Under the pieces are notes generated by a model. The model was given only the letters and a program-made list of their open reading frames with translations, was not told the origin of the DNA and did no database searches. A stretch of 64,000 nucleotides of DNA, taken from assembly GCF_006345805.1 (NCBI RefSeq), contig NC_043002.1:46128001-46192000 (forward strand), read 5' to 3'. The position numbers were made by a program, and so were the translations under genes. Below, one piece after another: positions 4,496-64,000 of the stretch (its first letter is position 1; each line of letters opens with the position of its first letter). The stretch is from Octopus sinensis. Taxonomy: Eukaryota.

Positions 4496-4498
4496 ATA

Positions 4499-5350: not shown

Positions 5351-5436
<86 letters not shown>

Positions 5437-5526: not shown

Positions 5527-5600
<74 letters not shown>

Positions 5601-5750: not shown

Positions 5751-5770
5751 CTCTATATATGTGTGTGTAT

Positions 5771-6313: not shown

Positions 6314-6486
6314 TCTAAATTTTAGCCAGTCTGATGATAGCTTAACAGGCCAAAATTTCGAAGGCACTGTCAACAATATTCTTGTTTAAGAATAAACTTG
6401 TATTCCACAAAAGTATAGACTAACCCCTCAGATTAGTCTAAAATTGTTTTTATTATAACCAAACATAAAAACAAACATTAAAGATA

Positions 6487-6869
6487 TGCTTCCCAACCAT
6501 ATGGTTCCAGGTTCAGTTCCACTGCATGGCACCTTGGGCAAGTGTCTCCTACTATAGCCTCAAGCCAACCAAAGCTTTGTGAGTGGATTTGGTAGATGGA
6601 AACTGAAAGAAGCCTGTCATGCATATATATGTATATATATTCATGTGTGTGTGTAGGTCTTTGTGTCTGTGTTTGTCCCCCCACGATCGCTTGACAACTG
6701 ATGTTGGTGTGTTTATGTCACTGAAACTTAGCAGTTTAGCAAAAGAAACTGATAGAATAAGCACTAGACTTACACAGCATAAGTCCTGGTGTTGGTTTGT
6801 TCGACTAAAAGCAGTGCTCCAGCATGGCCACAATCAAGTGACTGAAATGTATAAAAGAGTAAAAGAGTA
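6487..6869 (+). mobile_element. tRNA-derived SINE, slightly 5'-truncated
   Basis: B-box-like ggttcagttcc, core gcaccttgggcaagtgtctcctactatagcc, central TA/TG tract, tail ending (aaaagagt)x2. Confidence 0.8.
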
Positions 6870-7549
6870 TATGCTGAGTAAAAAATAACAATTTTCTGAG
6901 AGAATGTACCAGTCTTTGAGGTAGACCTTAGAAGATTTGAGAACAAGGTTTCATCAAAGAAATAGATTAGGGTTCAAATACAGCATGTAGCAGTTTTAAA
7001 ATGTCATCATAAATATGCTGCTGCTGATAATTCTCCTTTGATTATACTTGAGTGCCATATTTTAACACAGAGATAGTATTTTGCTTATAGAGGCTTGAGA
7101 ATTCAATCCTTCTTGAAGGACTCTGAGGACTCAACTACACTAAAAATTGTGGTATTAAGAGAATATATTCATATTGTGTAAATTTCTTTTTATAGTAAAA
7201 GATAAAGATTACAAAATATTAGGCTAATAGTTTGATCAATGTTTACTATTCAGTACTAAGTATTTGGCATGTTGTTGGCAAAATTATTAAAAAATAATTT
7301 GTTTCAAATTAATTTCCAAGTTAGCATGGATACTGAAATATCTATATTTGGATATATTTTAGACTAAGTGTTTTATAGTTAGTTTATTCATCAGTTCATC
7401 AACCATTCAGTCAGGTGATAATATTTTTCTAGCAAGTGAAGTAATGAAGTAGTGAAGTAGTTGACATTTTAATCACATCCAAAATGCCTCTCAAACTAAC
7501 TCTTATGAAATTATTAAACCAATAAATGAATGAAGCATGTTAAAGAATA

Positions 7550-7754
7550 CTGTATTTTCCAGTATATAAGTTGACATAGCATATAGTGCAAATATGGTGT
7601 AAACATTCAAACATCATCACTATCTTTTCAAGTCCTGCTGCATTTCTCATGGAATTGTTGGTCCTCCAAAGTCACCTTGGTGTATAAGTTAGCTTACCTT
7701 TTTTGGCTGTAAAGTTTGATTGGAAAAATTTAACTTGTATGCTGGAAAATACGA
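7550..7754. mobile_element. 205-bp MITE (Tc1/pogo-type) with ~22-bp TIRs and TA target-site duplication
   Basis: Left TA|ctgtattttccagtatataagt; right end reverse-complemented TA|tcgtattttccagcatacaagt. TA at 7548-7549 and 7755-7756. Confidence 0.7.
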
Positions 7755-8460
7755 TATATTTACAAACTTTAGATTGGTTATATACATCTGAATTTATGTT
7801 CTACCAATGAAATTAGAATAATCATGGAATTAAAAATTTGTAATTGTGATATTTTATGTCATCTTCAGATGTATGTTTCTGTTTTCTTAAAATAATATAT
7901 TTTTGTTATTAGAATTGATACTTTTGAGGTTGTTATCTTTCCTTTTATTTTCTCTCTTAATATAAATGTCCTTATATGTTTACCATAACTGCTTTGTAAA
8001 TTGAGTATGGGTTAAGATATATCAATGCTTTTAGAAAAGACAAAAATGTTATAATTTCTATTTATTCTTCTAAATATTTGAAGTTTCAGGTCTAGCTGGA
8101 AGAAGCAACGAGAATCAATTTTAGTGTAACTGTAATTGTATAGTATGACATTGTTATGACCTGTTAAACTCAGACAACGATTTTAGTAAAAAATATCTTA
8201 GTATGCATTATCTATAATTGCTTATAGTTACAACATTCTTTCACATATATTGTTATCATCAAAAAATTATATTTAATTATTGTAGATATTAACTGGAAAT
8301 AGCATCGTTTGAAATAATGTTATACGTAATATATATTATTAGGAAAGACAGCAAAAAGGCTCAAAAGCTTGATTTTAATAACTGTAGTTCCAAAGATTAT
8401 TAAAAAAATGATTTTTTAGTTTTAATGAGATCATAATGGATATTTTTATTTCTTTTTCAG

Positions 8461-44400: not shown

Positions 44401-47400
44401 TCAATATGTTTATGGCAACATTCACTGTTGGGGTCTTATTTGATGGGCTAAAAATGAAAGAATTTACAGAATTATTTTCCAAGGAATCTTCTACTTTCCT
44501 ATCATTGCCTGATGGTTTAATAAATACAACTACTCCTTTTATAGTATTTACATCTCTTGACAGAAGCACAATCAAAGACATGACTGCTGTTAGTTACCAC
44601 AGAAAACAGTTTTTCATTTCTGAGCATTTGGTAACGGTCACTGATGCTAGAGACTCGCTTATGATTATAACACAGGTTCCAATATATGACTATTTTTTAA
44701 GCAGTTCTGTAGTCACTGATATTTATTTGCTTTCACTAACAGAAATAACAAAAAGGGAAAGAGATTACATTACAGCAACGCTGTCAATGACTCAAATTTC
44801 TTCAGAGGTTTACACAATAATCTATGTAGCTAAAGATATTTTGGTGGAAAAAGGATTGGATAATATGACAAATGTAATTGAAATGACTTTTCCAAACACA
44901 AGTACTAAAGGTGAATATCTAACACAACCAGTAATTCCATATGGAAAAGTTGATAACAGAACAAAGACAGTCATAGAATTAAGATCTTCAAATTACTTAG
45001 AAGGTTCATTATCTTTTCCTTCTATGACTGTTCATATCATAGATAAAGACAGTGTATCAACTCCTACTGTTCAATGTACTGTGAGACATACAAGTACTGA
45101 GATACCATCAAGATTGACACATGTTCAAAAACTCTCAGAAATGCTCACTCTTAAAAGGGAGACTCCATTTACCACAGATATTGATACTAAATCATTAGCT
45201 GTACCAATTAAAAAAATGACTGCACATTTTACAGTTTTTTCAAAGATTCCCACAGAGAGACTGTCAGAAAAATATAAGTATACAACCAGAAATGAAACTA
45301 AAATACTGGCAAGTACTTCAACTGAAAAGTCCTCACAAATTACTACTGACTTCAGACATATTTTGTTTCAAGATTTGACTCAAACAATTCAATATGAAAC
45401 AACAAGTGATGATCAGGATTTTCAAGTAGATTTTGATGAAACTTCCACTAGAAAAAGATATATTTACTTGAATAAAACAATTATAGAGGGATATATTTAT
45501 ACTGGCTCTGCAGACTCTACCCATATGGCATCATCATATTCTATTGATATATTTCATCCTGTAACTTCTACTCTCTTAAAGTATGGTACTATACTATTTG
45601 ATCTGTATACAACACAAATTATGGTTGAAACTACTACCAGTATTTTCCAGAGACATACTGTAACTGATTATCCATACACATCTACTAAACAATTTAAAAT
45701 CAGTACAACAGATATAACAAGCCAAAAAATATTATACACATACTTTAAAGATTTATCAAAGAGCAGAGATATGTGCTTATGGGACAGTAAAGATTCTAGC
45801 TGTGTTGAAGCCCAACTAACTGATCTAAAAACGACAAGTCAGCAAGAAGAGTACCAAAAAATGATTAAAGAAATACTTATATCAAAAGGTGACAGTTCAT
45901 ATGAAATGTTAACAGAGTCTTCCAGTGTTAATGTAACATTAGATTTCCAAATTATAAGGAAACAAACAAAGGAATTCATGAAATTGTTTAACACAGTGAC
46001 TAATCCTATGATAGAGTTCAAAAGTTATTCAGATATATCCCTAACTCAATCAAGTAGAGGTGCAAGTTCAGACAGATATATTAAGCTTATAGCAAAGGGA
46101 TTTGTAACTGAACATGTGCTGAGTGACAGACAAACTGACAGTCAACAATCTTTTCTTGTTACTGATGTTCAGTTTCTGGTTCCCAGTCAGCCGAGCATAG
46201 TACCAATTGATAGCACATTTCTGAGCCAATCTATCAAAATATCAATAGAAACAGTGACTGTCATTACAATAATAAAAGTACCAATAAAAACTGCTAGTCT
46301 TAGTCAGTCTATGAAAGTAGTTACAGAAGCAGTAATATCAAGTCTGTTTACCAAAAGACCAATAAAAACAGTAATTGCCAGTCAATCTATGGAAAAACCA
46401 AAACAAATATCTGTTAAATCTTGGAAAGCATTTATGGTGACTGAGGCCCAAATATCAACATCAAATTATGTCACAGGAATTATTCAGAGAATAGGTGTTC
46501 CCTCTGATAAAATATTATATGATGACTTTAGTATGTCTGAGAGTCCATTGTTTAGGACAAGTTTCCGTCTGTGGTGGAAAAAGGCAGAAAAAGTCACAGA
46601 GCTTGAAAGAATGAAGATTAAGCTCGATTATGAATCAACTATGAAAACAAAAATTGGAATGTTGAAGTCAACAGAAATACACAAAGATACAGTTTTTGAC
46701 AAAATGCCTAAAATAATATTTAGATATAGCCTGACCACCCCAGATATAACTGATGTTACCACACCAATGAAAAATCTTAGTTATTTTGAGATTTTAAATG
46801 CTACTACACCTGAAATTGCCAGTATATCATATAAACATCTGAAAGCAGAAATAAAAGATTATCAATTAAAATCCTTTACTCTTGTTGATGTTGATTACCA
46901 GATGCAAAACACATCTCTATGTACTTTCCAAACAGATTTAGGTAAGAAAACAGTAACAGATATGTCATCACCCTCCAGCCTACACCCCAAACCATTTATA
47001 AAAGATGTATTGTGGATGGCTGCAACTCCAGGCTTTAGAGATTATATGGAAACTATAATTATAGAGGTTGCTTCAAATGTTAGCCTGATTGTAACAACAC
47101 CTAATGCTACTTTGTATAGGAGTTTAACGATTCATTCTAGTGGAAAAATTAAGGCTTTGGAAAGGGATATTACTATGAAGGCCATTTATCTTGGATATAA
47201 ACTGCCAGCAAGAACTACTGTTAGCATCAAACAAACATTATTAAGTAGTGTCAAGACAATACACTTAAGTCAAGATGATTCAACAATTATGTCAAAAAGA
47301 TTAATAGAATTAGCTACTAATACAATAACATATGAAATATCAAAATATGAACAAGGAATACAAACATTAAGTGTTACTAATTACTATAAAGTTCAAAGAG

Positions 47401-50400
47401 ATAGTGTGAGTTTAATATTTGAGAATGTGGAAATCACAACCTATGAAAGTTTGACAACGGAAAAAATAAAAACTATTAGACAAGAAACTAGATTGACTTA
47501 TTATGATAGTGCTCATACAGGCATATTTAATGAACTGAAATTATTATCAACAAGCAAAGAATTAAGTTCAGAAAGTAAAAAAAAAATGACTATGGAAAGC
47601 AAGCAGTTTATCAGAAAAACAGATGATGTTTTGCTTTATGGTTATGTTACAAAATCTGTGAAAACAGAGCCTATCAGTAAAGACATGTTCCTTGATAAAA
47701 GATTTTATGAAATAATAAAAGTCTCTACAGTTTCACACTTGCCAACTGATACCAAACAGCTGGTAGTTGCAACAGATTATAAAATAAAGAATGAAACAAG
47801 TTTTGACTTGAAACTCATCAGTAAAATGGAAGATAAAGATATTGAAAAATATGTAAAAACTGATAGACATTTGATACTACACACTGGCAATACCACACAC
47901 TCATTATTTTTACTTCAATATAGAAATCTAACATCTGAAAGTATATTTGATAGTATTATAACAAAAATATATCCAAGACTAACCACAGAGGCAAAAATTA
48001 TAAAAGACCTAATGACTCCAAGTCAGTATTCTCATTCAATGATATCTGAAAAACTTACAGCAAAAGATGTAATATACAGATTATCTGAAACATCAAAAAT
48101 AGATTCCAGTCATTTAGATATGAAATATTTTCATATTAATGATTCTTCTCTATCCTTGGTAATTCCTCACATGACAAAAGCATTAAGCTTTGATAAAATA
48201 TCAGATGTCATGTCTTCATTAATAATACTAAAGTCAACAACAGGTACAAGTGTAACAGTGATACCATCTATAGCAGAGCCAAAAACAAGTAAAATGTTTG
48301 CTGCTGTATTCATTGATAGCATTACACAAGATAAATTATTATCGACTATAGGAACATTAGTTAATTACACAGAGGAATTTATAAGTAAAAGCACAATGGT
48401 AACTGATGTTACAGAAACATTTCTAAAAGACGATATTAAAATGAGTATAAAATATCTGTTACCAGTAAGAGCATCAACAAGTCCTTCACACACAGTTTAT
48501 TTAAACATTACAGAGTCAACAATAATTCCTGTACACCAGTCAAGAACTGATTCTACTGAATTCTTCCCAACATCAGGAACACTAGGATATATTTCTACTA
48601 CCATCAATACATTTCCAGTGTACTCAATATTTCCTGTTCTTCATGTTAATGTAACAACAGCTAGTTTAAAGAGTGATATACTATTAACCTATGACAGTTT
48701 ACATACAGCTTCTAGCTTTATTACAGAGAAATATATTGCTCCACTTACTCAGAAAACTGTACAAACAGATATTACAAAAAAGGGGTCTATAGCACAAGTT
48801 TTTCAGCGTAAAATGACTAGTACCTCATTAAAAATAAGTTCTTTGATTGATATGACAACACGTTTCTCTATAACCAAAAAGCATCAAGAAACAATGGAAA
48901 TCTCTAAGGTTCATATAGTAAGCTCATCATATCCAACCCAAAGAGCATTGAGTTACAAAATAATATCTTCTGTAGCTTCAGTTGCTGAAACTTCTAAGAG
49001 AAATGGTACAGCAGTATTAGGAAAATTAGTCAAGGAGCTCAAACTGGGGGATGTAACAATTGCTGAAGAATACATTCTATTTGGAATTCCTACTACTCAA
49101 TCAATTAAAACCTTTATAGTTAGTAAAATGGAAAGTAAGGTTATTAGTGATAATATTACTGAAGTGCAAGACAAAAGTACCACAATTATCTCAAGTGTCT
49201 CTGCAGAAATATCACATATTGGTGTTTCTAAAAAACATTTTAAACTTCAACATTTTTCAGAGCAAATTTTTCAAAATTTTTCCTCAGAAAATAAGACTTA
49301 CAGTGTATTATTTGTTGGTTTATCAACTACTAAACAACATCAGGATACATTCAAAATAAATGACACTATCTTGAAAAAGCCAACAATCCAAGATGGTTTT
49401 CAACAAATTCAGTTAGAGACTTTATCAACATCATTTCCAATCCTTGCTCAATATTCAGAAACAGCAAGCTCTGAAATCTTATTAAAAGTATTTCCAGAAT
49501 TATGGTCAACCAAAATTTATCAACCACTAAGCAGTGTTACTGTGAAAAGTATCCAATCAGCAGACACTACTATGTCAACAGACTTATTTCATGCAATTCT
49601 GGAAACTACAGACATAATAGGTCATGAAAATGTTTCCTATTTAGATGAATACAATATATCCCAGACCAAGCTTCTACTTCTTAAATCAATGGAAACTTTT
49701 AACACAACAGTACCATTGATTTTAAAAAAGAAAACACTCGGTATGACAACGGTTCAAATCATGCCTTTCCAATATTATTCAGATGAAATAAAAATAATCG
49801 ATACCACAACAATTCAAATGGTATTATTTTCATCATCTCCTGATATTTCTACACTCAGAATATTATCTCACTATTATCCAGATAAAAGAAAAGTATTTAA
49901 TATTACTATGATTCAAATGACACCATCTAAATATCATCCTTATGAAATGATATCTATTGAAAGTGGCTATAGTAAACCTATTGTAGTGACTGCTATGAGA
50001 AGCATAAACATCTCAAAAAGTGAACTGGTTCAGGGAAAAGATATGCTGCAAATCACTAAATTATCTGTTTTACCAACTTTTAGCAAAAGTTTTATAAGAC
50101 TTACTTCAGCTAAACTTACAACATCCATCACTACGGAACCACCAAAACCATTTGTTCTAGGTAGTGTCATAAGCTTGATAATAAATACTGTAATACCACT
50201 AACATTTTCAGAGTCTGAAACTGAAATGATATATAATGTATCTAGGGTGCTAACACCTTTCAATAGAAGCATTTCAGATGAAACTACAGGTGATGAGTTT
50301 ATAGATGTGCCAAGTATTACAAAATTTCATCAAGAACCACTGAGTGTGGTCACCTTAGGCGATAAAAGAGTATTATTTCATTCAACAGCTGGAGAACTTT

Positions 50401-53400
50401 CAGAAATATCTACATGCACGTCTACTGCAGAAATATTTTCCAATCTTTCACAAGGATCTATTTTACAAACAAGGCAAATCACAAAATTCTTAGGCAAAAA
50501 ACATGTGACATCAACTAGCATAACAAAGTTTAGAGGGGAAAGACCTCGTTATAAAGTATATGATATACAAACAACACTTAGTGTAACAACTATATCAGCA
50601 GCTACTGACTTATTAACAGGATTAGCAAGTTCACTGGATACTGTTGACATTCTAACTGACTATATAATGGGATCAGCTAAAAGTTTGATACCTAGATTAA
50701 TATTAACTGAAGCTAGAAGTAGAAGTAGATCAATAGATATAACAAGTAAATCATTTGCTATTGACATAATAAATGGATCAATGATTACTGATATAACAGC
50801 TAGATCCTGGGTTATTGATATAAGAACCGGATTATTAAGTTCTGGAGATGTAGCTGGACCAACTGATGCCTCAGTCCCTAGAATAATGGCTGATAAGATA
50901 ACTAGATCACAAACTATGATTTTAACACCAGGTTTGGTGCTAGCTAACCTAACTAAATTGAAAAATACTACTAACTTAATATCTGAACTGAAAACTACTG
51001 ACATATATAGCATAATTTCTTCTATGATAACTGGATCAACAGATATTGACATAGTAATTAAATTGAGAGGTACTGATTATATAACAACACCACAAGTTAC
51101 TGGATCGATGTCTACTGATATAAGTAGAGTAGAAACTACTAGGTTTATACATGGATTGCAATCTGACATAACTGGTACAATTACAACTGATATAATAATT
51201 CCACCAATGGTTATTGATATACTAAACAGATCAGTTACTGATAGATACAGCATTACAAGAATGAGTACATTTACAACTAATGTTACATTAACTGGATTAG
51301 TTTCATCTGAACCAATTACACCTGAAGAGACAATATCTAAAGTTACTGATGATATGATAATAGAACTGCTTACTACAGACACAGTATCTGTACCTCCTAG
51401 AAGACTTGTAACAGCTAAAGCTGTGACTCAGTTTACCACAGCAGGATCAGATGTCATTAGCACAATAACAATAAGATCTTTTATAACACAAGTTGCAGTA
51501 TCAATCAGAAAAGACATGATTGAAAGTGTTGTTACTGATTATACATTGATTGAGTCTGGTATTAACATTACAGAAATTTATTCACTTGCTGTTGAAGGTG
51601 TAGTTACTGACTCAATATTTTCCAAAGAATTGAAAATAAAAGTAGGTTTACTACCTGAATTCACTGCTACAAAAGATAGAGCTTTGGTTCTCTATGATGG
51701 CATAAGCACAAGATTAATTGCTAAAAGAGACACTATGAGCATAAAAGTCACATCTTTTGTGGGATCCAAGCCTTTTGACTCAGGTGATAAAACAATAGGA
51801 AATACAGTTAGTGATACAATAATGAAATCAGTTATAACTGGATCTGTTCCTTTTGCACATGTCACAAGAGAATCTATTGCATATGATGATAGGAAAATCC
51901 TCACCGACTTCAGTGATGTATTAATTAGATCGAAAGACTTTCATGAAGCAACAACAGAATCTATAACAACAGAACATAATATTTCTCAGAAAGTGATAAC
52001 AAAGGGAATTGCTGTCGATACCAAAATCATTGAATCTAAAATCTCACATGATACAACAATGCAGAGTTTAGTCTTTGATAATATAACAAAGGAATCAACA
52101 ATATTTTATCAAATGATGAAAGAAGTAAATATTTCTAAAGCTGTAACAAAGAAATCTATTATCTCTGATGAGGTAACAACATATATCATATCTGATAATG
52201 GAACAATGGTAGCTGTCACATCTGACAAGTTAACAGTAAAATCTAGCCTTCTTGCTAATGTAACCCCAGAATTCACCATTTCTCATAAGACAACAGTAAC
52301 ATCCACCCTTATTGATAGTATAACAAAGGAATTTACTATTACTGATGATGTAAGAAAAGCATTCATTATTTTTGATAATTTAACAACATTTATTACTCCT
52401 GATTATGTAAGCTTAAAGCATATAGCTTTTGACAACATAACAATGTATTATATAGGTTCTGAAAATGTAACATTAGAATATAGAGTATCTGATGATGGAT
52501 TAATGACACTTATTGGAACAAGTGATCATGTAAAACTAATATCTAAGCATTCTAATGATAGTACAATTAAATCCATTGATTCTGATGATGTAAAAATAAT
52601 TTCTGATGAATTAACAGTTGCACCCTTAGTTTTCACTGGGAGAGTAATAGAGACTAGTTCCTCTGGTGATGGAAAAATTGGTTCTATACTCTTTACTGAA
52701 CTATCTTTGAGACCTGTAGACTCTGACAATGCAACTATAGCATCTGTAATATCTGATGAAGCAATAACTGGATTGATAATTCCAGATCATAAAATTTTGA
52801 GATCTGACTACACATCAAAGACAACTCTTCATATTCATGATGTAAAACCAAGGACTCTTGTTTCTGGTAAGGTAAAAGTTAAAACTCAAGTGGTAACTAA
52901 AGCCATACACTTTGATGCTATATCAAAGCAATTTCTTGTTAGTGGCGATATAACAAACAGATCTTTAATCAGTGATCATAGAACAAGATATCTACATAGA
53001 GACAATACAACAGCACAGTTTCTAGTGAGTGATGACCTAACAACAAGATCTTTAGCCAAAGATGATATATTAACATCAAGATTTAAAATCATTGTTGATG
53101 AAGAACTAATAACAAAGTTTCAAATCGATCATGATGTCACAAGTTCTCTGCTTAGTGACCATATAATATGGTCTCTAGTGAGTGCCAATATAACAAATTC
53201 TCTAATTAAAGTTGAGGTAACAATGAGATCTATATTTGGAGATTATGTAACACAGAAGTCTAGAGTTGATGATGATGCAACAAGATTTCTTGCTGAGGAT
53301 GACAATATAACAATGAGATTGTCTTTGGTCAGTGATGATGAAAAAAAAGCATCTGTTGACTCAGTCGATGAACATATGGGCTCTACTCTCTTAGCTATTG

Positions 53401-56400
53401 CAACAGTTGAATTTACAATCCCCCATGATGCAACAAGGAAAGATATAATTTCTACAGAAATACTCTCTGATAATGAAACAATTAAAGAACCTGTATCAGA
53501 AGATGTAACAATGACATCCATGTTCACTCAGGATGTAACAGCAATAACCACATTTTCTGATTATGTAACAATGCAACCTACAATATTTAATGATACAATA
53601 ATGAATAGTACCATATATGATGATGTTATAACAGGATCTGTAACATCTGACAAAACAATGGAACTCATGGTCTTCGAAGAAGTGACATCAAAACATACAG
53701 TTTTTGATGATATAACAATTGACTTTAATGCTACAATGAGATCCACAGCTTCTGATGATGTAGCAACGATATTTTCACTAACAGATGATACAGCAATAAT
53801 ATCCACAGTTTCTGATGATATAGCAATCAAATCTAAATTTGATGTCAAAACAACAAAGTACATAGTATCTCGTGACATAAGAGGACAATCCAAAGTCTCT
53901 GGTGGTGTAGCAACGAAGTTCATAATTTCTGGTGATGTAACAATGAAATCTACAGACCATGATGATGATAGTATCACAAAAATATCCACTTTCATTCAGA
54001 TTGTAACAATGAGAACTATAGTTTCTTTTAAGGCTACAAGGAAATTTCCATTACCTCATGACATAACAAAGAAATCTACTGAATCTATGACAATAAAATT
54101 CAGGGTCTCTGATGTAAGGAGTTACACGGTCTCTGATAATGTAACCACTAAATTCACATACTCTGATGAAACAAAAATTATAAAAATGGGATTGGTAATA
54201 TTTGATAATATGACATTTAGATCCTCTAGCATTAGAGCAATACAATTTGTGGATTCTGAAAATGTTACTGCTCATACTATTGCCTCTGATGATCTAACAT
54301 TTGGGTCTATTTTCTCTGATGAGATCATAAGTGAATCTGTTGTTTTTAGTCATGTGACAACAGGATATATTTTACCGGAAGATATAACAGATGCAATTGG
54401 TTGGGATTCTAAAGCAGGAGAATTAGTTACTAAGAAAGATGTGGTAACAAAACAAACATTCATTGACTTATCAACTGTGACTTTTAATGTTTCAAGTATA
54501 TTGACTACGATGGGTGATTCAGTCACCACATTTGTTGTTTTAGAAAGTTCTATAACTACAACCATTGCTACTGATGATTATATTACAATAAGTGTTGCCA
54601 TAAATGATTCATTTGCTGTGGCTACTACTACAGATGACTCAATCACTAAGACTGTTTTTATAAATGGTTCTACCATTGCTGTAATTGAGTCAGTTAACAA
54701 GTCTGCTTCTATGGAGGATTCAGTCCCCATGCTTGTTGATAAAGATGATTCAGTGAATCAGTCAGTAGCTACAGATGCTTCTATAGCCATAACAGCTATC
54801 ACTGATGATAGAGCAGGACTAATCATTAGAGAGCATTCAAAGGTGCCATCAAGTGTGGAAGACGATGATACAATATCTACAACAGTTCAGACTAGCGTTA
54901 AAATAATTATATTAACTACTTATGGTATTGTAACAAGAGACACAGTAGTTGATGATCGCACATTAAAATCACTTGCAACTGACCCCCAAATGACGAGAGT
55001 ATCTGCAACTGATTATATAAAATCTTCAGTAATTACAGACAAGTTAATCATTGGTTTAATTACTGCTAACAAGACACTATATGTGTCAGATGCTACTGAG
55101 GAGGTGGTGTATAAGCCAGTGGTTATTGATGTAATGATATCCAGACCAGTTACTACAGGTATGACAATATATAAATTAATTGGTAGTGATGTCATAACAT
55201 ATAGAACAATTCTATCTGATGTAGTGACTCACAAAACAATTGATATTAAAAATAAAACAACTCAATCACTCAGTACTCATGAAGTAATGTACCAGCCTTT
55301 GACTATTAATGTAACAATATATAGACCAGTTATTCCTTATACTGCGTTGAATAAAACAGTTGGCATTGATGATAAAGTAGGTGGGTCTCTTGCTACTGAT
55401 TTAATAATATACAGATCACTTGCAATTGATACAATCATTGTTACAGATGTGGTAACAAGTAAACAAAATGGTACTGTTCTCCTAACATATAGACCACTTG
55501 CTTTTGATTTTGTGACATACAGACCAGGTGTTACAGAGGATACAGTGGATAAACTATTTGTCACCCATGTGATTACATATAAACTAATTACAACTGATGT
55601 TGTAACATACAGACCAGCTGTTACTGGGAAGAAAGTTGATGCACCACTTGTCACTTACCTGGTAATATATAGAATGGTTGTTACTGATAAGCCTGTTGCT
55701 ACTAATAAAACAGTATATAGATCAACTACCACTAATTTGGTAATACATAAAACCGTTACCACAGAGATGTTGATGCATATACCATCAGTTGCTGACGTGA
55801 AAGTATATAGACTAGAAGCTATTAGTGATGTAGTGGTTCAAGCAACTACTACAGGTCATGTAGTGATTGAGCCAACCACTACTGGTGATATAGTGGTTCA
55901 ACCAACGGCTACTGGTGTAGTTTTGTATAAACCAGTTGTTATTGTTTCAGTAACGTATAAACCAGTAGTGACTAGTATTGTAATATATAGATCAATATCT
56001 ATTGATGTGATGGAATATACATCAGTTACGTCTGATAAAACCATACATGAACCAGTTGTTATTGGTGGAATTGATGAAGCTGAAGATATGTCAGCTACTA
56101 CAGATGAAGTCAAACCAAGATCAGTTGCTGCCCTCAAAGTTGTATCCGGTTTGATCAAAAGCAATGAAACAATATCTAGATTGCTCACCACAAACAAAAG
56201 TGTATCTGAATCAATTTCAAGCACTGAAACACTATCAGGAATAATTGCCACAGATGAAACCGGTACAGAATACAAAACTATTGCAGGTTTGGGTGTCACA
56301 GTTAAAGGAACATCAAGATTAGTTGCTACTGATAGAGTAATATCTCATTTGATTGACTCTGATAGAGCAATATCTACTTTAGCTGCAACTGGTAAAACAA

Positions 56401-59400
56401 TAACTGGTTCAACTGGTATGGATAAAGTATCATCTAGATTATTCACCTCTATCGAAACAATGTCAGTCACCACTGAAGAATCAATATATGGATCAGTTGA
56501 TGAGGCTGAAACTATATCTGTATCAACAATTGACACAGATATAGCAATATATAAATCAGTTGATGATGTTAAAACTGTATCTGTATCAATGATTGCTACT
56601 GATGTAGCAATATCTGACTTGGTTGATTCTGATGAAGCAATAAGTGTAACTGCTATCACAGTTTCCCCTGATGAAGTAGTATCTGTATCAATTCACACTG
56701 AAACAATATTTGGATCAATTGAGACAATGCCTCATGCAGTTGTTGTCAAGGAAACAGCACTGGTATCAGCTATAACTATCAAAACAAAAATTGAACCAAT
56801 TGCTTCTGATGAGGGATTAGTTACCATTGATGAATTAGTATATGGGCCACTTGCTACTAATTTGATTAAATATAGACCAGTTGCTACTGATGTTACAATA
56901 TATAGACCAGCTCTTACTGGTGCTACAATATATAGACCAAGTACTACCGATGTTACAATCTCTAAATCAGTTGTTACTGATGTTACAATATATAGACCAG
57001 CTTTTACTGATGCTACAATATATAGACCAAGTACTACCGATGTCACAATCTCTAAACCAGTTGTTACTAATGTTACAATATATAGACCAGCTCTTACTGG
57101 TGCTACAATATATAGACCAAGTACTACCGATGTTACAATCTCTAAACCAGTTGTTACTGATGTTACAATATATAGACCAGTTGTTACAAATGTTACAATC
57201 TATAAACCAGCTGATACTTATGTTACAGTATATAAACCAGTAGCTACAGATGTTACAATCTATATACCAACTGCTACTCAAGTTACAGTCTATAGACAAA
57301 CTGCTACTGTTGTAACAACCTATACACCAGTTGCTACTAATGAAACAGCCTATAGACCAACAGCTAGTGATGTTAGAATCTATAGACCAGTCTTTTCTGA
57401 TGTTACAATTTATAGACCAGATGTTACTGATGTTACAACATATGCACCAGCTATTACTGATGTTACAATCTATAAACTAGCTGCTACGGATGTTACCATC
57501 TATAGTCTAGCTGCTATTGATGCTACAGTCTATAAACCAGATGTTACCGATGTTACAATCTATAAAGCAGATGCTATTGATGTTACAATGTATAGCCCAA
57601 CAGCTAGTGATGTTACAATCTACAGACCAGATACTACTGATGTTACCGTCTATAGACCACCTACTACTGATGTTACAATATATAGACAAACAGCTACTTA
57701 TATTACTGATGTTTCAATCTACACACCAGCTGTCAGTGATGTTTCTATCTATAGGCAAGCAACTACTAATGTTACAAGCTATAAACCAGCTGCTACTGAT
57801 GTTACTGATGTCACAATCTATAGATCAAATGCTACTGATGTTACAATATATAGACCAGCTGCTACTGATGTTATAATCTATAGACCAGCTGCTATGGATG
57901 TTACCATCTATAGACCAGCTGCTACTGATGTTACAATCTCTAGACCAGCTACTTCTAATGTTACAATCTATAAAGCAGATGCTACTAATGTTACAATATA
58001 TAGAACAGCAGCTAGTGATATTGCAATCTACAAACCAGATACTACTGGTGTAACTCTTTATAGACCACCTACTACTGATGTTACAATCTATAAACAAGCT
58101 GCTACTAATGTTACTGATATTACAATCTATAAACCTGTAACTGCTGATGTTTCAATCTACAGGCCAGCTGTTACTGATGTTACAACCTATAGATCTGCTA
58201 CAACTAATGTTACAATCTATAAACCAGCTGCTACAGATGCTACAATTTATATGCCAGATGCTACTGATGTTACAATCTATATATCAGCTGCTACTGATGT
58301 TACAGTCTATACACTAGCTGATTCTTATGCTACTGATGTTACAATCTATAGATCAAATGCTACTGATGTTACAATCTATAAACCAGCTGCTACTGATATT
58401 ACAATCTATAGACCAGCAGCTACTGATGTTACAAGCCACAGATCAACTGTTACTGATGTTACAATCTATAGACCAGTGGTTACTTATATATCAACATTTA
58501 GAACAATTGTTAAAGATGAAAAGGAATATGGACCAGTTATTACTTCTGATGACAAAGTAATATATAGATTTATTGATGGCATGTTATATGGAACAGATAT
58601 GTATGAGATCACATATAGATCACCTGCATTTAATGAGACAAAGTCCAGGTCAACTGCCATTGATAAGAAAATATATAAGCCATTTGCTACTAAGAGTATA
58701 ATTTATAGATTAGTAGTGACAGATCAAACATCATTTGAAACTAATGATACTGATGTTACTGATGAAGACATAAGAAAATTAATCACTAGTGACTATGTGT
58801 TAGAAAGTGGTCAAGTTAAAGATTATCTATCAGTTACTTCTGAAGTAATAATGGTTCATTCAACCACTTCAAAGGATACAACATACAGCCGAAATGTTAC
58901 AGTCAAAGCAAAATATAAAAAAGTTATTACTGATGAAACAATACATGGTACAGTTACCACTGAGGAGGCCACATACAACCTGGTATTGCCTGGTGCAATT
59001 GTTCCTGGTACAATTGTTTCTAGTACAATTGTTTCAAATAAAACAATATCTGGCATGGTTGTTACAAATGAGACAATACCTGGTACAGTTGCTAAAGATA
59101 TGATAATAACTAGCACAGTTATTGCTGATCAAACTATATCTAGCACAGTTTCTACAGATGAGACAAAATCTGGTAAAATGGTTATTAATGAGACAATACA
59201 TAGTACAGTGACTATGGATGAAAGAATAACTGGTTTAGTAGCTATAGATAAGATGATGTCTGATAAAATTGTCACTAAACAGACAATATCAGGTGAAGTT
59301 GTTACTGATGAAATGATAACTGGCACAGTTGCTATAGATGAGATAATATCTGGGACAATTGCTACTGATATGATATCTGGGACTGTTGCTATAGATGGGA

Positions 59401-62400
59401 TAATACTTGGCACAGATGAAATAATACCTGGTGCAGTGGCTACAGATGAGATAATACCTGACACGCCTACTACAGGTGAGATAATACCTGGCATACCTAG
59501 TACAAAAGAGATAATAACTAGCATACCTGCTGCAGATGAGACAATACCTGTCATACCTGCAACAGATGAGATAGTACCTGGCATACATGCTACAGATGAG
59601 ATAATATCTGGTCCATCTGCTATAGATGGGATAATACTTGTTGCACCTGCTACAGATAAGATAATATCTAGTACTCCTACTACAGATGAGATAATATCTG
59701 GCACATCTGCTACAGATGAGATAATAGTTGGTACATCAACTACAGATGGAATAAAATTTGGTACATCTGCTACAGATGAGATAATACCTGGAATACCTGC
59801 TATAGATGATGTAATACCTGGGACACTTGCTACAAATGAGATATCTGGCATGCCTACGAGAGTTAAGATAATATCTAGCACACATGACACAGATGAGACA
59901 CTACTTGATGCAGTTGCTATGGATGAGACACTCCCTGCCAAAATTGTTACTAATTACACAGGACGAGATGCAGTAGCTACAGATGACATAACATTAGGTA
60001 CAGAGGCTACAAATGAAACAATACCTGGTACACTTGCTGCTTATAAGACAATGCCCATTACACTTGCTACTGATATGAAAAGCTATGGTACAGTTACTAT
60101 TAATGAGGCAATGTCTGGTGTAGCAACAACAGATGAGATGATATCTAGTGTTGGTGACACAAATGAGACAATACAAAGGACAGTTGCTACTGATGATACA
60201 ATATTTCACACTGATGTTACTGTTGAGACAGCAGCTTCTACACTTGCTCCTGATGACACAACACAAGGCACAGATGCTGCTGATGAAATAATACTTAGCA
60301 CAGATGCTACAGATGGTACAACACTTGGAAGTTTTACTACTAATGAAGTAACAGCTAGCACAGTTGCTACTGATGAGAAAATGGCAATATCTAGAATATC
60401 TACAATTCAGGAAGCAATATGTTATGCAGTTACTACAAATAAGATGGCACTTCACACAGATGTTATTCATAAAACAATTCTTGGCACAGCCATTACTGCT
60501 TTCACAACATCTGATTGGCTTGTAGCTACAGATAGAACAATGACTTGTACAGCTGCTACAAGTAAGACATTGCCAGGTAGAATTGTTACAGATGAGATAA
60601 CATCTGGCATAGTTACTACAGATGAGACAATGCCTAGCACATTTACAACAGATGAGATAATTACTAGCACAGTTGCATCAATTAAGACCAGGACTGGTAC
60701 AGTTCTTACGGACGAGATAATACCTGACATATTTGGTACTGTTGAGAATCTAACTAGCAGAGTTGTTACTAATGAAAAAAGGTATGATACAGTTGTTACT
60801 GATGAAATACTACGTGCCACAGCCATGACTAATGTGACACTACCTGGTATAGCTACTACTAATGAGACACTACCGAGCACAGCTGTAACTGATGTGATGC
60901 TAGCTGGTACAGCTGTTACTAATGAGGCACTACGTGACACAGCTGTTATTGATGAGATACTACCTGGCACAGCTGTCACTAATTGGACACTCCCTGGCAC
61001 AGCTGTGACTGATGTAATGCTACTTGGCATAGCTGTTACTAATAAGACATTACCTAGTACAGTTGTGACTGATGTGATGCTACCTGGCACAGCTGTTACA
61101 GATGAGACACTACCTGGCATAGCTGTGATTGATAAGACACTACCTGGCAAGGCTGTTACTAATGAGACACTACCTGGCACAGCTGTGACAGAGACACTAC
61201 TTGGCATATCTGTTACTGATGAGACACTATCTGGCACAGTTGTTTCTGATGAGACACTACCTGGCACAGCTGTTACAGATGTGATACTACCTGGCACAGC
61301 TGTTACTGGTGAGACATTACATGACATAACTGTAACTAATGAGACACTACCTAGCACAGCTATGACTGATGTGATGCTACCTGGCATAGTTGTTTCTGAT
61401 GAGACACTACCTGGCACAGCTGTTACTGATGAGATACTGCCTGGATTAGTTGTTACTGATGTGATGCTGCCTGGTGCAGCTGTAACTGGTCAGACACTAC
61501 CTGGCACAGTTGCGACTGATGTGATGCTACCTGGCACAGTTGTTACTAATACGACACTACTTGGCCCAACTGTGACAGAAACACTACCTAGCACAGCTGT
61601 GGCTGACGTGATACTAACTGGCACAGCTGTTACTGATGTGGTACTAATTGGCACAGCTGTGACTAATGAAACACTACATAGCAAGGCTGTTACTAATGAG
61701 ACACTACCAAGCACAGCTATGACTGATGTGATACTACCTGGAAAAATTGATGTGACACTAACTGGTACAGACGTTACTGATGAGACACTACCTGCCACAG
61801 CTGTGACTGATGAGATACTACCTGGCACAACTATTACTAATGAGACATTACCTAGCACAGTTGTGACTGATGTGACGCTACCTGGCACAGCTGTGACAGA
61901 GACACTACTTGGCATATCTGTTACTGATGAGACACTACCTAGCACAGCTGTGACTGATGAGACACTACCTGGCACAGCCGTTACTGATGAGACACTACCT
62001 GGCACAGCTGTAACCAATGAGACACTACCTGGCACAGCTGTGACTGATGTGTGGCTACCTGGCACAGCTGTTACAGATGAGACACTATCTGGCACAGCTG
62101 TGACAGAGACACTACTTGGCACAGCTGTTACTGATGTGATACTACCTGGTACAGCTATGACTGAAGAGACATTACCTGGCACAGCTGTAACTAATGAGAC
62201 ACTACCTGGCACAACTGTAACTGATGAGATACTGCCTGGAATAGTTGTCACTGATGTGATGCTGCCTGGCACAGCTGTGACTGATGTAATACAACCTGGC
62301 ACAGTTGTTACTAATGTGACAATACCTCGCACAAATGTGACTGATATGAAGCTACATGGTAGAGCTGTGACTGATGAGACACTATCTGGCATAGCTGTAA

Positions 62401-64000
62401 CTGATCAGACACTACATGGCACAGCTGTTACTAATGAGACACTACCTGACACAGCTGTGACTGATGTAATACAACCTGGCACAGTTGTTACTAATGCGAC
62501 AGTACCTCACACAAATATAACTGATATGAAGCTACATGGTAGAGCTGTGACTGATGAGACACTACCTGGCATAGCTGTAACTGATCAGACACTACTTGGC
62601 ACAGCTGTTACAAATGAGACACTACCTGACACAGTTGTGACTGATGTAATACTACCTGGCACAGCTGTGACTGATGAGACACTACCTGGCATAGTTGTGA
62701 CTGATGAAACACTACATGGCATAGCTGTTACTAATGAGACACTATCTGGCACAGCAGTTACAGATGTGATACTACCTGGTACAGCTGTGACTGATGAGAC
62801 ACTACCTGGCATAGTTGTGACTGAGGAAACACCACATGACATAGCTGTGGCTGATGACACACTACCTGGCACAGCTGTTACTGATGTGATACTACCTGGC
62901 ACAGCTGTGACTGATGAGACACTACCTGGCATAGTTGTGACTGAGGAAACACTACATGACATAGCTGTGGCTGATGACACACTACCTGGCACAGCTGTTA
63001 CTGATGAGACACTACCTGGCACATCTGTTGCTGATGAGATGCTATCTAGCACAGCCATTATTGATAAGACACTACTTGGCACTGTTGATGAAACATTGTC
63101 TAGAACAATTAGCATTGACAAATCGGTATCTAGCATATTTGCTACTGATAGGGTATCATCTGACACAGTTGTTACTAATGGAACACTACTTGATGAATTT
63201 GCTGCTGATAAGTCAATACTTGGTATAATTGTTGGAGCAATGTCTAGTACAGTTGTTAGTGATGAGACAATATCCCGATCAATTACTACTGGCACTACAA
63301 ATGAAACAGTAGATTGGCCAGTTGCTACTGTTCAGACAGTGTATTGGCTAGTCGACACAACTAAAGAAATGTTAGAATCAATTACTACTGATACAACAAT
63401 AAATGGAACACTTGCTGTCATTGAAGTAAAATATGGACCATCTACAACTAAAGAAATAATATCCCAATCTGTTACTAGAAAGGAGAAAATGCCTGTACCA
63501 ATTCACTCTGATAGGATAACACAGCTGAAACATTCACTTTCTACAAGGGAAACATTCCCTAAATCAATTTCTACTGATGAGGCCGTACTTGAAACAGTTT
63601 CCACTGACATGGTAATATATAAATTAGTTTCTACTGATGAAAAGATTCTTGAATCAGTTTCCACTGAGGCAGCAACACTTAAAACAGTGTCTACTGATGA
63701 AGTAGTGCAAGTATCAGTTCCCACTGATGAGGTAATAGACACATTAGTTTCCACTGGTATAACAATATATGGATCAGCTTCCACTGATACAGAAATAAAT
63801 GTATTAACTACTGTTGCTGCTGATACTATAGTAAGACTATTTTCTGCTAACTGGACCATAATTAGACCAATCATCACTGATTATACACAAGACAGAAATA
63901 TTACTATTGAAGGAAAGGTAGCCAGGCAAACTACTATAGTGAGGATGGTTGTCACAGATGAGACAATAACCAAAACAATTGTCTCTGACAGAACAAAATA
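8461..64000 (+). CDS. Giant single-exon ORF (>=55,540 nt, >=~18,500 aa, 3'-incomplete) encoding a putative secreted mucin-like/structural glycoprotein
   Basis: Codons start at positions divisible by 3. Hand translation of 8436-11.4 kb and spot checks at 13.4, 14, 20, 25, 30, 35-37, 40, 43, 45, 50, 53, 57, 59, 62 and 64 kb found no stop; the frame ends ...ETITKTIVSDRTK plus TA at 63999-64000. All nine + strand ORFs listed after 8.4 kb are in another frame and none is in this one, as expected if a stop-less ORF was skipped. In-frame upstream stop TGA at 8409, in-frame ATG at 8436, strong acceptor (tatttttatttctttttcAG) ending at 8460. Tandem repeats have codon-multiple periods (21, 36, 30 nt). 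Confidence 0.92.
10434..10952 (+). repeat. Coding 19-aa Cys repeat (hydrophobic-x-hydrophobic-x-L-x-C) x8
   Basis: Cys codons at 10452, 10509, 10566, 10626, 10683, 10740, 10887 and 10944 (spacing 19, 19, 20, 19, 19, 49, 19 aa). Confidence 0.8.
13830..15990 (+). repeat. Coding degenerate ~21-24-aa repeat (..V-T-V-P-Q-I-H/D..G-S..)
   Basis: Recurrent TAPQIHI, ISQIHI, TVPQIHID, SQIHID, QQIHT, VPQIHT, TIPQID, KIPQID, TVPQVD. Confidence 0.65.
30150..30795 (+). repeat. Coding 21-nt/7-aa tandem repeat [H/L/Y]-N-[T/I]-T-V-T-P, ~31 units
   Basis: Translated directly; 16 units carry an N-x-T sequon. Confidence 0.92.
35580..36865 (+). repeat. Coding degenerate 36-nt/12-aa repeat F-N-[H/Y]-S-I-x-P-I-T-T-x-x
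   Basis: Translated directly; 26 N-x-S/T sequons counted in ~430 aa. Confidence 0.85.
50570..64000 (+). repeat. Coding 30-nt/10-aa tandem array (~450 units) built on a T/S-D anchor, with block-specific consensus
   Basis: Approximate blocks: 50.6-51.9 kb TDI.TGS (very degenerate); 51.9-54.3 kb SDDVT; 55-56.8 kb TDVV.YRP / ATD..IS; 56.86-58.5 kb ATDVTIYRPA; 58.9-60.7 kb ATDEIIPG; 60.7-63.05 kb TDETLPGTAV; 63.05-64 kb VSTDE.I. Confidence 0.9.

What the first reader, a model, noticed from the sequence alone, without database searches (positions are those of the whole stretch)
50570..64000. 13.5-kb decapeptide array keeping one 30-nt register while its consensus changes block by block
Seen: roughly 450 units with a shared ACT-GAT (Thr-Asp) anchor, passing through at least six consensus types (TDI.TGS, SDDVT, ATDVTIYRPA, ATDEIIPGTP, TDETLPGTAV, VSTDE.I.). 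Homogeneity is very uneven: 50.6-56 kb is highly diverged, while 56.9-58.5 kb and 60.8-63.0 kb are near-identical. Inference: successive waves of local amplification from one ancestral 10-mer produced a block-copolymer architecture with graded chemistry, as in silks and byssal proteins; the conserved period suggests a structural periodicity such as a beta-solenoid or fibre.
Basis: partly seen in the sequence, partly recalled or inferred. Interest (0 to 1): 0.75.

Follow-up and report, generated by a model that had tools for sequence, protein, structure and literature searches.

The report
Repeat tail of giant octopus gene
The 10-amino-acid repeat array is real, but it is only the last quarter of one uninterrupted reading frame of at least 55.6 kb (18,529 or more codons) in an octopus genome, which most likely encodes an unstudied, lineage-specific, giant sugar-coated secreted protein.

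Summary
The array exists. About 413 units of about 10 aa lie between 51.9 and 64.0 kb, built on a [AV]-T-(D/N)-x-T core, with block consensuses SDDVT, ATDVTIYRPA, ATDEIISGTP, VTDETLPGTA and VSTDE.

Three details of the finding fail:
- 50.57-51.9 kb is not significantly periodic.
- The register is not kept: 15-22% of units are not 10 aa, and the T-D phase shifts at least 14 times.
- The "near-identical" blocks are only about 73-75% matched.

The array is the 3' part of one stop-free frame, 8412..63998 and beyond. It has 0 stops in 18,529 codons, against 640-2117 in the other five frames.

The window is 98.3% identical to Octopus vulgaris OX597819.1. There the same frame is open, but it is annotated as fragmentary "hypothetical proteins".

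dN/dS between the two genomes is 0.46, and all 14 indels are whole codons. No Pfam domain or non-octopus homologue was found.

N-x-S/T sequons are 2.3-3.5 times enriched while control motifs are not. This points to a secreted, N-glycosylated protein.

Units cluster by block, multi-unit duplications are about 6% diverged, and pN/pS among units is about 1. Local amplification is therefore supported.

AlphaFold gives one beta-strand per unit at low confidence, so the beta-solenoid idea stays open.

The parts
8412..63998 (+). One stop-free reading frame of 18,529 codons that runs off the 3' end of the window; the whole finding lies inside it
   Evidence: the only open stretch of 200 aa or more on the + strand; 0 stops against 640-2117 in the other five frames; 703 stops expected from its own codon-position composition.
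8436..8531 (+). First in-frame ATG (context ATAATGG) and a 32-aa hydrophobic N-terminus, MDIFISFSGLKPNLVIILVVYSVTFKPLIIQA|SK. This is a possible signal peptide, inferred by eye and not run through a predictor.
   Evidence: The nucleotides are identical in O. vulgaris. A possible splice acceptor (TTTCTTTTTCAG|G, ~8460/8461) inside it leaves an upstream exon possible.
10380..10946 (+). Seven or eight units of 19-20 aa, each ending h-x-h-x-L-x-C. Fifteen of the protein's 32 Cys lie in 9111-11241.
13836..14300 (+). Seven copies of a 22-23-aa unit with the core VTVPQIHIDxS; it decays into irregular copies up to about 15990
30150..30786 (+). Heptad array, about 30 copies of HNTTVTP (21 nt), with an N-x-T sequon in most units
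   Evidence: Two 7-aa indels relative to O. vulgaris.
35560..36900 (+). Dodecad array, roughly 35 units of (F/L)N(H/Y)S(I)(F/I)P(I/V)T.., with an N-x-S sequon in most units
50568..51899 (+). Block A of the finding (scattered T-D-I motifs); no demonstrable period
51900..54449 (+). Block B: about 87 old, diverged units with consensus vSDDVT.kSi
   Evidence: z=24; profile link to later blocks is weak
54450..56849 (+). Blocks C (aTDDSITiSV), D1 (vTDvVtYKPv) and X (aTDETISGSI): about 83 diverged units
56850..58499 (+). Block D2: about 55 units of ATDVTIYRPA, with a 3-unit higher-order repeat at 56873-57188
58500..60719 (+). Blocks E0 (VTDETISgTV), E (ATDEIISGTP) and E2 (ATDETilGTV): about 77 units
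60720..63079 (+). Block F: about 80 units of VTDETLPGTA (GC 42%), with 6-unit (62265-62672) and 4-unit (62731-63039) duplications
63080..63998 (+). Block G: about 31 diverged units of VSTDETI..., cut off by the window end
59129..63295 (-). Five antisense ORFs of 158-316 aa. They are by-products of a repeat unit that lacks stops in one antisense frame and are not genes.
   Evidence: one antisense frame of block F carries only 4 stops in 763 codons; my reading of the reverse complement of the F consensus finds one stop-free antisense frame.

Best explanation
WHAT IT IS. The array is a translated repeat domain in the 3' part of one giant, apparently intronless gene. The gene has at least 18,529 codons (at least 55.6 kb) within the window and comes from an octopus of the Octopus vulgaris group.

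MOST LIKELY PRODUCT. An orphan, secreted, heavily N-glycosylated extracellular polymer. It is rich in Thr, Ser, Ile, Val and Leu and almost free of Cys. It carries at least five separate internal arrays, with units of 19, about 22, 7, 12 and 10 aa.

HOW THE DECAPEPTIDE DOMAIN GREW. It grew by unequal exchange or replication slippage of 1-8-unit segments inside an old generic [AV]-T-(D/N)-x-T-[IL]-x-x-x-[VA] array. This produced the younger subfamilies D2 (Tyr/Arg/Pro, near neutral), E, and F (Leu-Pro-Gly, strongly acidic).

WHAT SELECTION KEEPS. Selection visibly keeps the open frame, the approximate period, the T-(D/N)-x-T core and the overall composition. It does not keep the individual residues.

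WHAT IS SHOWN AND WHAT IS INFERRED.
- Shown: it is coding, it is one frame, it is octopus, and its mode of evolution.
- Inferred: secretion and glycosylation, from sequon enrichment and the hydrophobic N-terminus.
- Inferred: the physical role as a long, extended, beta-prone, glycan-decorated spacer, fibre or gel segment whose length and charge blocks matter more than exact sequence.
For: CODING, ONE FRAME
- 0 stops in 18,529 codons against 640-2117 in the other frames.
- 703 stops are expected from its own codon-position composition, 48 of them in the old array blocks alone.

ORGANISM AND ORTHOLOGUE
- The only hit among 1.84 billion representatives is CAI9724496.1, a 7,276-aa 'hypothetical predicted protein' of O. 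vulgaris.
- Its locus aligns to window 6312-49529 at 98.3% identity.
- That locus is open in the same frame for all 13,743 codons held.

SELECTION
- dN/dS is 0.46 (228 synonymous and 382 non-synonymous differences), and all 14 indels are whole codons.
- Among array units pN/pS is 0.94-1.36, and 0.97 between recent duplicates.

SECRETION AND N-GLYCOSYLATION
- N-x-S/T occurs 239 times against 102+-8.5 expected in the 13,580 non-repeat residues, and 78 against 22+-4 in the array.
- In the non-repeat part the reversed motif, Q-x-S/T, D-x-S/T and H-x-S/T are all at expectation; in the array D-x-S/T is itself 1.44x enriched, because it is the array's own anchor motif.
- Cys is 0.17% of residues.

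AMPLIFICATION.

BETA TENDENCY
- AlphaFold2 models have one strand per unit.
- Hydrophobic residues make up 30-37% and S+T 25-29%.
Against: - No transcript, peptide or glycan evidence was available.
- The orthologue's accession and array peptides are absent from the held supplements of an O. vulgaris skin-mucus proteome. One of those files was truncated when stored.
- The signal peptide was judged by eye only, and an upstream exon cannot be excluded.
- The N-terminal 950 aa are very basic (K+R 17.8%), which is not typical of mucin-like proteins.
- The C-terminus lies outside the window, so anchoring or multimerisation domains are unknown.
- The array itself could not be compared with a second genome, because the O. 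vulgaris locus held stops at window position 49,529.
- AlphaFold confidence is low.
Confidence: 0.6

Rival explanations
1. The array is a classical mucin-type PTS domain: an intrinsically disordered, densely O-glycosylated bottle-brush in which only composition matters.
For: - Thr-rich units, with Pro at about 7% in blocks D2 and F.
- pN/pS of about 1 among units.
- It is encoded in a giant exon, as in mucins.
- AlphaFold confidence is low.
- D2 and F pass the lenient thresholds of S+T at least 20% and P at least 5% quoted in PMC2515642.
Against: - S+T is only 25-29%, and no 100-aa window of the array reaches 40% (maximum 36).
- Hydrophobic residues are 30-37% and D+E 9-15%.
- Blocks B, C-D1-X (pooled), E and G have 1.4-3.8% Pro.
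- An invariant-position core (T-D-x-T plus a hydrophobic residue at column 5) survives in blocks that are otherwise saturated with change.
Confidence: 0.25
2. The array folds into a regular beta-solenoid or cross-beta fibre, with two or three units per coil.
For: - Both AlphaFold2 models are all-beta, with one 7-8-residue strand and a 2-3-residue turn (P-G or R-P-A) per unit.
- All top Foldseek matches are right-handed beta-helices.
- There are weak sequence matches to designed beta-solenoids and to spruce budworm antifreeze protein.
- The composition is rich in beta-branched residues.
Against: - pLDDT is 50-56 and pTM 0.36-0.47.
- No Foldseek match has E of 0.001 or better; the best is 0.087 with TM 0.37 or less.
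- The PDB sequence matches have E of 0.08 or worse, except one designed propeller at 2e-4.
- 15-22% of units carry 1-5-residue indels.
- pN/pS of about 1 argues against tight packing constraints.
- The pseudo-alignment was made from the array's own segments, which can bias AlphaFold towards regularity.
Confidence: 0.3
3. The product is a giant intracellular protein (cytoskeletal or nuclear) and is not secreted.
For: - The N-terminal 950 aa are very basic, with K/R-rich runs.
- No recognised extracellular domain was found.
Against: - Sequons are specifically enriched 2.3-3.5 fold while control motifs are flat.
- Cys is nearly absent outside a small N-terminal cluster.
- The N-terminus is hydrophobic.
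Confidence: 0.12
4. The array is non-coding satellite or pseudogene DNA, or an assembly artefact.
For: - An array of stop-free units starts out stop-free by construction.
- Block F alone has little power: about 2 stops are expected.
Against: - 0 stops against 48 expected in the old blocks B-X, 8 in D2, 12 in E and 8 in G.
- Over the same DNA, + frame 1 of D2, which is stop-free in the consensus, has gained 8 stops.
- The frame is continuous with 14,000 upstream codons that are conserved and open in a second genome.
- Even the most similar long duplicates differ by about 6%, so repeat collapse is unlikely, though copy number is unverified.
Confidence: 0.04

Closest known systems
Octopus vulgaris CAI9724496.1 / UniProt A0AA36AZK7 ('hypothetical predicted protein', 7,276 aa) and the adjacent 4,617-aa gene model on OX597819.1
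   Same: It is the orthologous locus: 99% protein identity and 98.3% DNA identity over 40 kb, with the same open frame.
   Different: The deposited models begin 2.9 kb downstream of the frame's start. They introduce introns and split one continuous frame into several genes. The part of the locus held does not reach the decapeptide array.
Vertebrate and insect mucins with giant central repeat exons (for example MUC16 and Drosophila mucin-like proteins, PMC2515642)
   Same: They are giant extracellular glycoproteins with Thr/Ser-rich tandem repeats encoded in one very large exon. The repeats evolve by unit gain and loss with little constraint on sequence.
   Different: - No VWD, SEA, CTCK or other mucin domain is present in the window.
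- S+T is only 25-29%, with 30-37% hydrophobic residues.
- Most of the protein (13,580 aa) is non-repetitive.
- The signature is enrichment of N-glycosylation sequons rather than a PTS composition.
- From my own knowledge, not checked here, the largest MUC16 exon is about 22 kb, well below 55.6 kb.
Spider aggregate-gland glue spidroin AgSp1 (coding sequence 42,270 bp; PMC6553539)
   Same: It has an extreme-length, highly repetitive coding sequence for a glycoprotein adhesive, with two alternating motif types in blocks.
   Different: - No spidroin terminal domains or Gly/Pro/Gln motifs are present.
- Units here are 10 aa, not about 100 or more.
- The octopus frame is already longer than AgSp1 (at least 55,587 nt) and is mostly non-repetitive.
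Mussel foot protein 1 decapeptide repeats (recalled from memory, not tested)
   Same: It has a decapeptide period. Block D2 carries one Tyr, one Lys/Arg and one Pro per unit.
   Different: There is no sequence similarity. The octopus units are acidic and hydrophobic, with a Thr-Asp anchor. There is no evidence of DOPA chemistry.

Membership tests
Mucins (PTS-domain glycoproteins) | Tandem-repeat domain rich in Ser/Thr and Pro. Lenient thresholds are S+T at least 20% and P at least 5% (quoted in PMC2515642). Classical domains have S+T of 40% or more. | tested here: inconclusive
   S+T is 25-29% everywhere. P reaches 5% only in D2 (7.1%) and F (6.9%). No 100-aa window of the array reaches 40% S+T (maximum 36). 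Hydrophobic residues are 30-37%.
Mucins (PTS-domain glycoproteins) | Flanking Cys-rich domains of gel-forming mucins (VWD/C8/TIL, CTCK) or the SEA/EGF/TM domains of membrane mucins | tested here: not met
   Pfam finds none in 18,529 aa. The C-terminus lies outside the window, so this holds for the N-terminal and central parts only.
Mucins (PTS-domain glycoproteins) | Dense O-glycosylation of the repeats | not testable with these tools
   This needs glycoproteomics.
Secreted N-glycoproteins (general) | Signal peptide and used N-x-S/T sequons | tested here: inconclusive
   Sequons are enriched 2.3-3.5 fold while control motifs are flat. The hydrophobic N-terminus was judged by eye. No signal-peptide predictor was available and there is no experimental evidence.
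Beta-solenoid repeat proteins | A confidently predicted or solved coil of stacked strands with a fixed unit length | tested here: inconclusive
   AlphaFold2 gives all-beta models with one strand per unit, but pLDDT is 56 and 51. No Foldseek match has E of 0.001 or better. 15-22% of units are not 10 aa.
Spidroins / silk proteins | Conserved spidroin N- and C-terminal domains; Gly/Ala/Pro/Gln repeat motifs | tested here: not met
   There is no Pfam hit on the N-terminus or anywhere else. A+G is 5-15%. The C-terminus was not seen.
Extensin_1 (PF02095) | Score at or above the Pfam gathering threshold | tested here: not met
   78.1 bits against a cut-off of 105, on the Tyr/Pro/Thr/Val-rich block D2. 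This is compositional similarity.

The most novel reading that the evidence does not exclude
The locus encodes one of the largest animal proteins from what may be the longest uninterrupted coding exon yet described in an animal: at least 55.6 kb, with the end not reached. On this reading the product is a cephalopod-specific new class of N-glycosylated, beta-structured extracellular fibre or adhesive. Its charge-graded decapeptide blocks would act as a natural block copolymer.
Probability: 0.15. Interest if true: 0.8.

Novelty: new variant of a known kind. Interest (0 to 1): 0.55.

Why it matters
ANNOTATION. If the frame is expressed as one product, current octopus annotations cut a protein of at least 18.5 thousand residues into unnamed fragments. 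Proteomic and transcriptomic studies would then miss or mis-assign it.

BIOLOGY. Octopus secretions such as skin and sucker mucus, egg stalks and cement, and gut and beak linings have few known structural components. A giant orphan glycoprotein is a candidate for one of them.

EVOLUTION. The locus holds several arrays of different ages and unit lengths inside one frame. In it, selection on frame and sequon density can be separated from selection on residues.

MATERIALS. The blocks (Tyr/Arg/Pro near neutral, Leu-Pro-Gly strongly acidic) are simple enough to synthesise and test.

Tried and rejected
PROTEIN HOMOLOGY SEARCHES
- The search for homologous proteins was run on aa 1-2000, on window 48000-54599 and on block D2. 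All returned nothing, and a 4,477-aa query timed out.
- That tool also missed the 99%-identical O. vulgaris model that the exhaustive search found. Its negatives therefore say little for this organism.
- I could not obtain the neighbouring 4,617-aa O. vulgaris model, so the array was not compared across genomes.

OTHER DATABASE SCANS
- Rfam gathering scan of the window: nothing.
- Pfam on all 18,529 aa: only a sub-threshold Extensin_1 match.
- Two metagenome scans with array 26- and 22-mers: nothing. The first pattern, a consensus, turned out to have no exact copy even in the window.
- PDB sequence searches: only weak compositional matches.

LITERATURE
- Nothing was found on the accession or the repeat peptides.

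METHODS THAT DID NOT WORK AS INTENDED
- Overlapping self-alignments intended as pseudo-MSAs were simply re-stacked by MAFFT and discarded.
- The minus-strand frame control is unreliable because the frames were not mapped to the consensus. Only + frame 1 of D2 was used.

REJECTED READINGS
- Bacterial giant adhesin: the upstream 8.4 kb is microsatellite- and SINE-rich eukaryotic DNA with no ORFs.
- Antisense ORFs as genes.


Full report
1. THE OBSERVATION

TRF reports period-30 arrays at 56871-58476 (52.3 copies, 73% matches) and 60789-63082 (77.1 copies, 75% matches). It also reports shorter period-30, -60 and -90 rows between 53.7 and 60.7 kb.

Amino-acid autocorrelation shows lag 10 as the top lag in every 600-aa window from about 51.6 kb to the window end.

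A wrap-around (cyclic) profile alignment of 50568-63998 gives 451 units, 384 of them exactly 10 aa.

De novo and seeded training against residue shuffles show where the period is significant:
- Not significant in 50568-51900 (score z=-0.7).
- Significant in every later block: B z=24, C z=4.4, D1 z=19, X z=7.3, E0 z=9.3, G z=12.7, and the D2/F windows z=43-103.
- Three upstream control regions give z of 0.9-2.4.

Block consensuses are:
- B: vSDDVT.kSi
- C: aTDDSITiSV
- D1: vTDvVtYKPv
- X: aTDETISGSI
- D2: ATDVTIYRPA
- E0: VTDETISgTV
- E: ATDEIISGTP
- E2: ATDETilGTV
- F: VTDETLPGTA
- G: VSTDETI...

The unit count, the Thr-Asp anchor and five of the six named types are therefore right.

Three statements are not right:
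- The first 1.3 kb is not demonstrably part of the array.
- The register is not kept. 67 of 451 units are 5-13 aa long. With block-specific profiles only 323 of 413 units are exactly 10 aa. The T-D phase modulo 10 changes at least 14 times between 56.7 and 63.1 kb.
- The 'near-identical' blocks are only moderately homogeneous. Adjacent units are 72-73% identical in DNA and nearest neighbours 90-93%. The commonest 30-mer occurs four times. A 26-nt consensus string has no exact copy at all.

2. WHAT SURROUNDS IT

The array is not a free-standing feature. One frame is open from 8412 to the last complete codon of the window: 18,529 codons.
- It contains no TAA, TAG or TGA, while the other five frames carry 640-2117.
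- From its own codon-position composition 703 stops would be expected. Of these, 48 fall in the old array blocks (51.9-56.85 kb), 8 in D2, 12 in E, 2 in F and 8 in G.
- In D2, + frame 1, whose consensus unit is also stop-free, has picked up 8 stops over the same DNA.

Positions 1-8400 are typical animal non-coding DNA: (AC)n, (AT)n and (TC)n microsatellites, SINE-like elements and no long ORFs. The five antisense ORFs at 59-63 kb are by-products of the repeat.

3. ORGANISM AND ORTHOLOGUE

An exhaustive HMMER search of 1.84 billion representatives with residues 501-1700 found a single protein. It is CAI9724496.1 / A0AA36AZK7, a 'hypothetical predicted protein' of Octopus vulgaris with 7,276 aa.

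Its locus is OX597819.1:84,212,294-84,260,630, reversed.
- It aligns to window 6312-49529 at 98.3% identity.
- In that locus the same frame is open for all 13,743 codons held.
- The deposited models (7,276 aa with introns, then a 4,617-aa neighbour) are therefore fragments of one frame.

Between the two genomes there are 228 synonymous and 382 non-synonymous differences. pS is 0.026, pN is 0.012 and dN/dS is 0.46, ranging from 0.22 to 0.67 in 4-kb bins apart from the barely diverged first bin (1.36 on 19 differences). All 14 indels are whole codons, and two of them are exactly one heptad inside the heptad array.

DNA divergence is about 1% in non-repeat parts and in the upstream non-coding DNA. 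It is 3.6-5% in the heptad array and 3.8-6.5% in the last 1.2 kb before the locus ends.

The window is thus from another individual of O. vulgaris or from a very close relative. I cannot say which. The locus held stops 2.4 kb short of the decapeptide array, and I could not fetch more.

4. WHAT THE PROTEIN LOOKS LIKE

Searches for known families:
- No Pfam family reaches threshold anywhere. The only listed match is Extensin_1 at 78 bits against a cut-off of 105, on D2.
- Rfam finds nothing.
- PDB sequence searches give only weak compositional matches.

Composition of the whole protein:
- T 14.5%, S 11%, I 9.8%, L 7.8%, K 7.2%, V 7.2%.
- Only 32 Cys, 15 of them in window 9111-11241. There a 19-20-aa unit ending h-x-h-x-L-x-C recurs 7-8 times.

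The first in-frame ATG (8436, context ATAATGG) opens MDIFISFSGLKPNLVIILVVYSVTFKPLIIQA|SK. By eye this resembles a signal peptide, and the nucleotides are identical in O. vulgaris. A possible splice acceptor lies inside it, so an upstream exon is not excluded.

The most informative feature is the density of N-glycosylation sequons:
- In the 13,580 residues outside all arrays, N-x-S/T occurs 239 times against 102+-8.5 in shuffles (z=16).
- In that non-repeat part the reversed motif, Q-x-S/T, D-x-S/T and H-x-S/T all sit at expectation; in the decapeptide array D-x-S/T is itself 1.44x enriched (127 against 88.5), as expected from its anchor.
- The heptad array (HNTTVTP, 30150-30786) is built around a sequon, as is the dodecad array (FNHSIIPIT..., 35560-36900).
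- In the decapeptide array the anchor column is Asp (about 50-70%) or Asn (16-24%), followed two residues later by Thr. This gives 78 sequons against 22+-4 expected.

I read this as selection for N-glycan sites, and hence passage through the secretory pathway. This is an inference.

5. HOW THE ARRAY EVOLVES

After removing codon-position composition, the 30-column nucleotide profiles of blocks C to G match each other at one cyclic shift only.
- r is 0.42-0.88, against 0.32 or less for the second-best shift.
- Block B is linked weakly (0.20-0.42), and block A is not linked.

MAFFT, given 200-aa stretches of D1, D2, E and F, aligns them on the same T-D anchor.

250 of 347 complete units have their most similar unit in their own block: 46 of 48 in D2 and 71 of 72 in F.

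The longest near-identical ungapped self-matches are:
- A 6-unit duplication: 62265-62492 against 62445-62672, 94.3%.
- A 3-unit duplication: 56873-57098 against 56963-57188, 93.4%.
- A 4-unit duplication: 62731-62919 against 62851-63039, 93.7%.
- An 8-unit duplication, and two dispersed copies at lags of 528 and 708 nt.

Block similarity is not a monotonic gradient. The terminal block G is closest to D1, E0 and E2 (r of about 0.8). I therefore read the layout as an old generic array into which the D2, E and F subfamilies expanded.

Differences of units from their block consensus give pN/pS of 0.94-1.36. Differences between the recent duplicates give 0.97. Residue changes therefore accumulate about as fast as silent ones, while stops are excluded and the T-(D/N)-x-T core persists even in saturated blocks.

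The youngest duplications (pS about 0.065) are about 2.5 times older than the divergence from O. vulgaris (pS 0.026). The array is therefore not turning over rapidly, and repeat collapse in assembly is unlikely.

6. PHYSICAL STATE

Composition by block:
- S+T 25-29%, P 1.4-7.1%, hydrophobic residues 30-37%.
- Net charge per 100 aa: -4.8 (B), -4.4 (C-X), -0.7 (D2), -8.4 (E), -11.7 (F), -5.6 (G).

This is not a classical PTS composition.

AlphaFold2, given alignments made of the array's own non-overlapping segments, predicts all-beta models with one 7-8-residue strand per unit:
- F: pLDDT 56.2, pTM 0.47.
- D2: pLDDT 50.6, pTM 0.36.

Foldseek against the PDB gives no match with E of 0.001 or better. 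The non-significant top matches are all right-handed beta-helices. The beta-solenoid or fibre idea is thus compatible with the data but not shown, and a glycosylated, partly disordered rod is equally compatible.

7. COMPARISON AND NOVELTY

The behaviour resembles mucin and glue-protein genes. These too have giant repeat-bearing exons, unit gain and loss, and weak residue constraint. The membership tests for mucins, spidroins, extensins and beta-solenoids are each unmet or inconclusive (see the table).

The coding sequence of spider AgSp1, described as the largest silk gene, is 42,270 bp (PMC6553539). The octopus frame already exceeds that within the window, and its end is not reached.

I found no paper on this gene or its peptides.

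I rate it a new variant of a known kind, of moderate to good interest. The interest comes mainly from the size and continuity of the frame, its orphan status and the sequon signature, rather than from the array alone.

Noticed in passing
window 8412-63998; L001 7109-48337: The finding's array is only the tail of a single stop-free frame of 18,529 or more codons. In O. vulgaris the same frame is split by annotation into a 7,276-aa model with introns, a 4,617-aa model and probably more.
   Followed up: yes
window 30150-30786: A second array: about 30 copies of the heptad HNTTVTP (21 nt), each with an N-x-T sequon. It differs from O. vulgaris by two exact 7-aa indels and is 3.6-5% diverged, against about 1% elsewhere.
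   Followed up: partly
window 35560-36900: A third array: a roughly 12-aa unit (F/L)N(H/Y)S(I)(F/I)P(I/V)T.., with an N-x-S sequon in most units. TRF sees only fragments of it (period 36).
   Followed up: partly
window 10380-10946: Seven or eight 19-20-aa units, each ending h-x-h-x-L-x-C. This is almost the only Cys-bearing part of the protein, so it is a possible disulfide or multimerisation module.
   Followed up: partly
window 13836-14300 (decaying to about 15990): Seven copies of a 22-23-aa unit with the core VTVPQIHIDxS, followed by irregular degenerate copies. It looks like an old, decayed array.
   Followed up: partly
window 9462-10511: This 1-kb stretch of the 5' coding region is only 0.1% diverged from O. 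vulgaris, against about 1% around it. Across 8412-12412 pS is only 0.004. The reason is unexplained; possibilities are constraint on the nucleotides, a recent sweep, or chance.
   Followed up: no
window 5773-5826 and 5932-5985; about 6480-6860; 4050-5700: Upstream non-coding DNA has an exact 54-nt direct repeat inside a GC-rich element. It also has a SINE-like element that I recognise from memory as common in octopus genomes, and long (AC)n, (AT)n and (TC)n microsatellites.
   Followed up: partly
window 3902-6924 versus L001 1-4256: Upstream of about 6312 the two genomes are rearranged relative to each other. There is an inverted 616-nt match and gaps, so the 5' flank differs structurally between them.
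   Followed up: no
window 59129-63295, minus strand: Five antisense ORFs of 158-316 aa arise because one antisense frame of the repeat unit lacks stops. A gene caller could mistake them for genes.
   Followed up: yes
window 60720-63080: Block F raises local GC to 42%, against 31-35% elsewhere, purely through its consensus codons (GAG, CCT, GGC, GCT). In a composition scan this could be mistaken for foreign DNA.
   Followed up: partly
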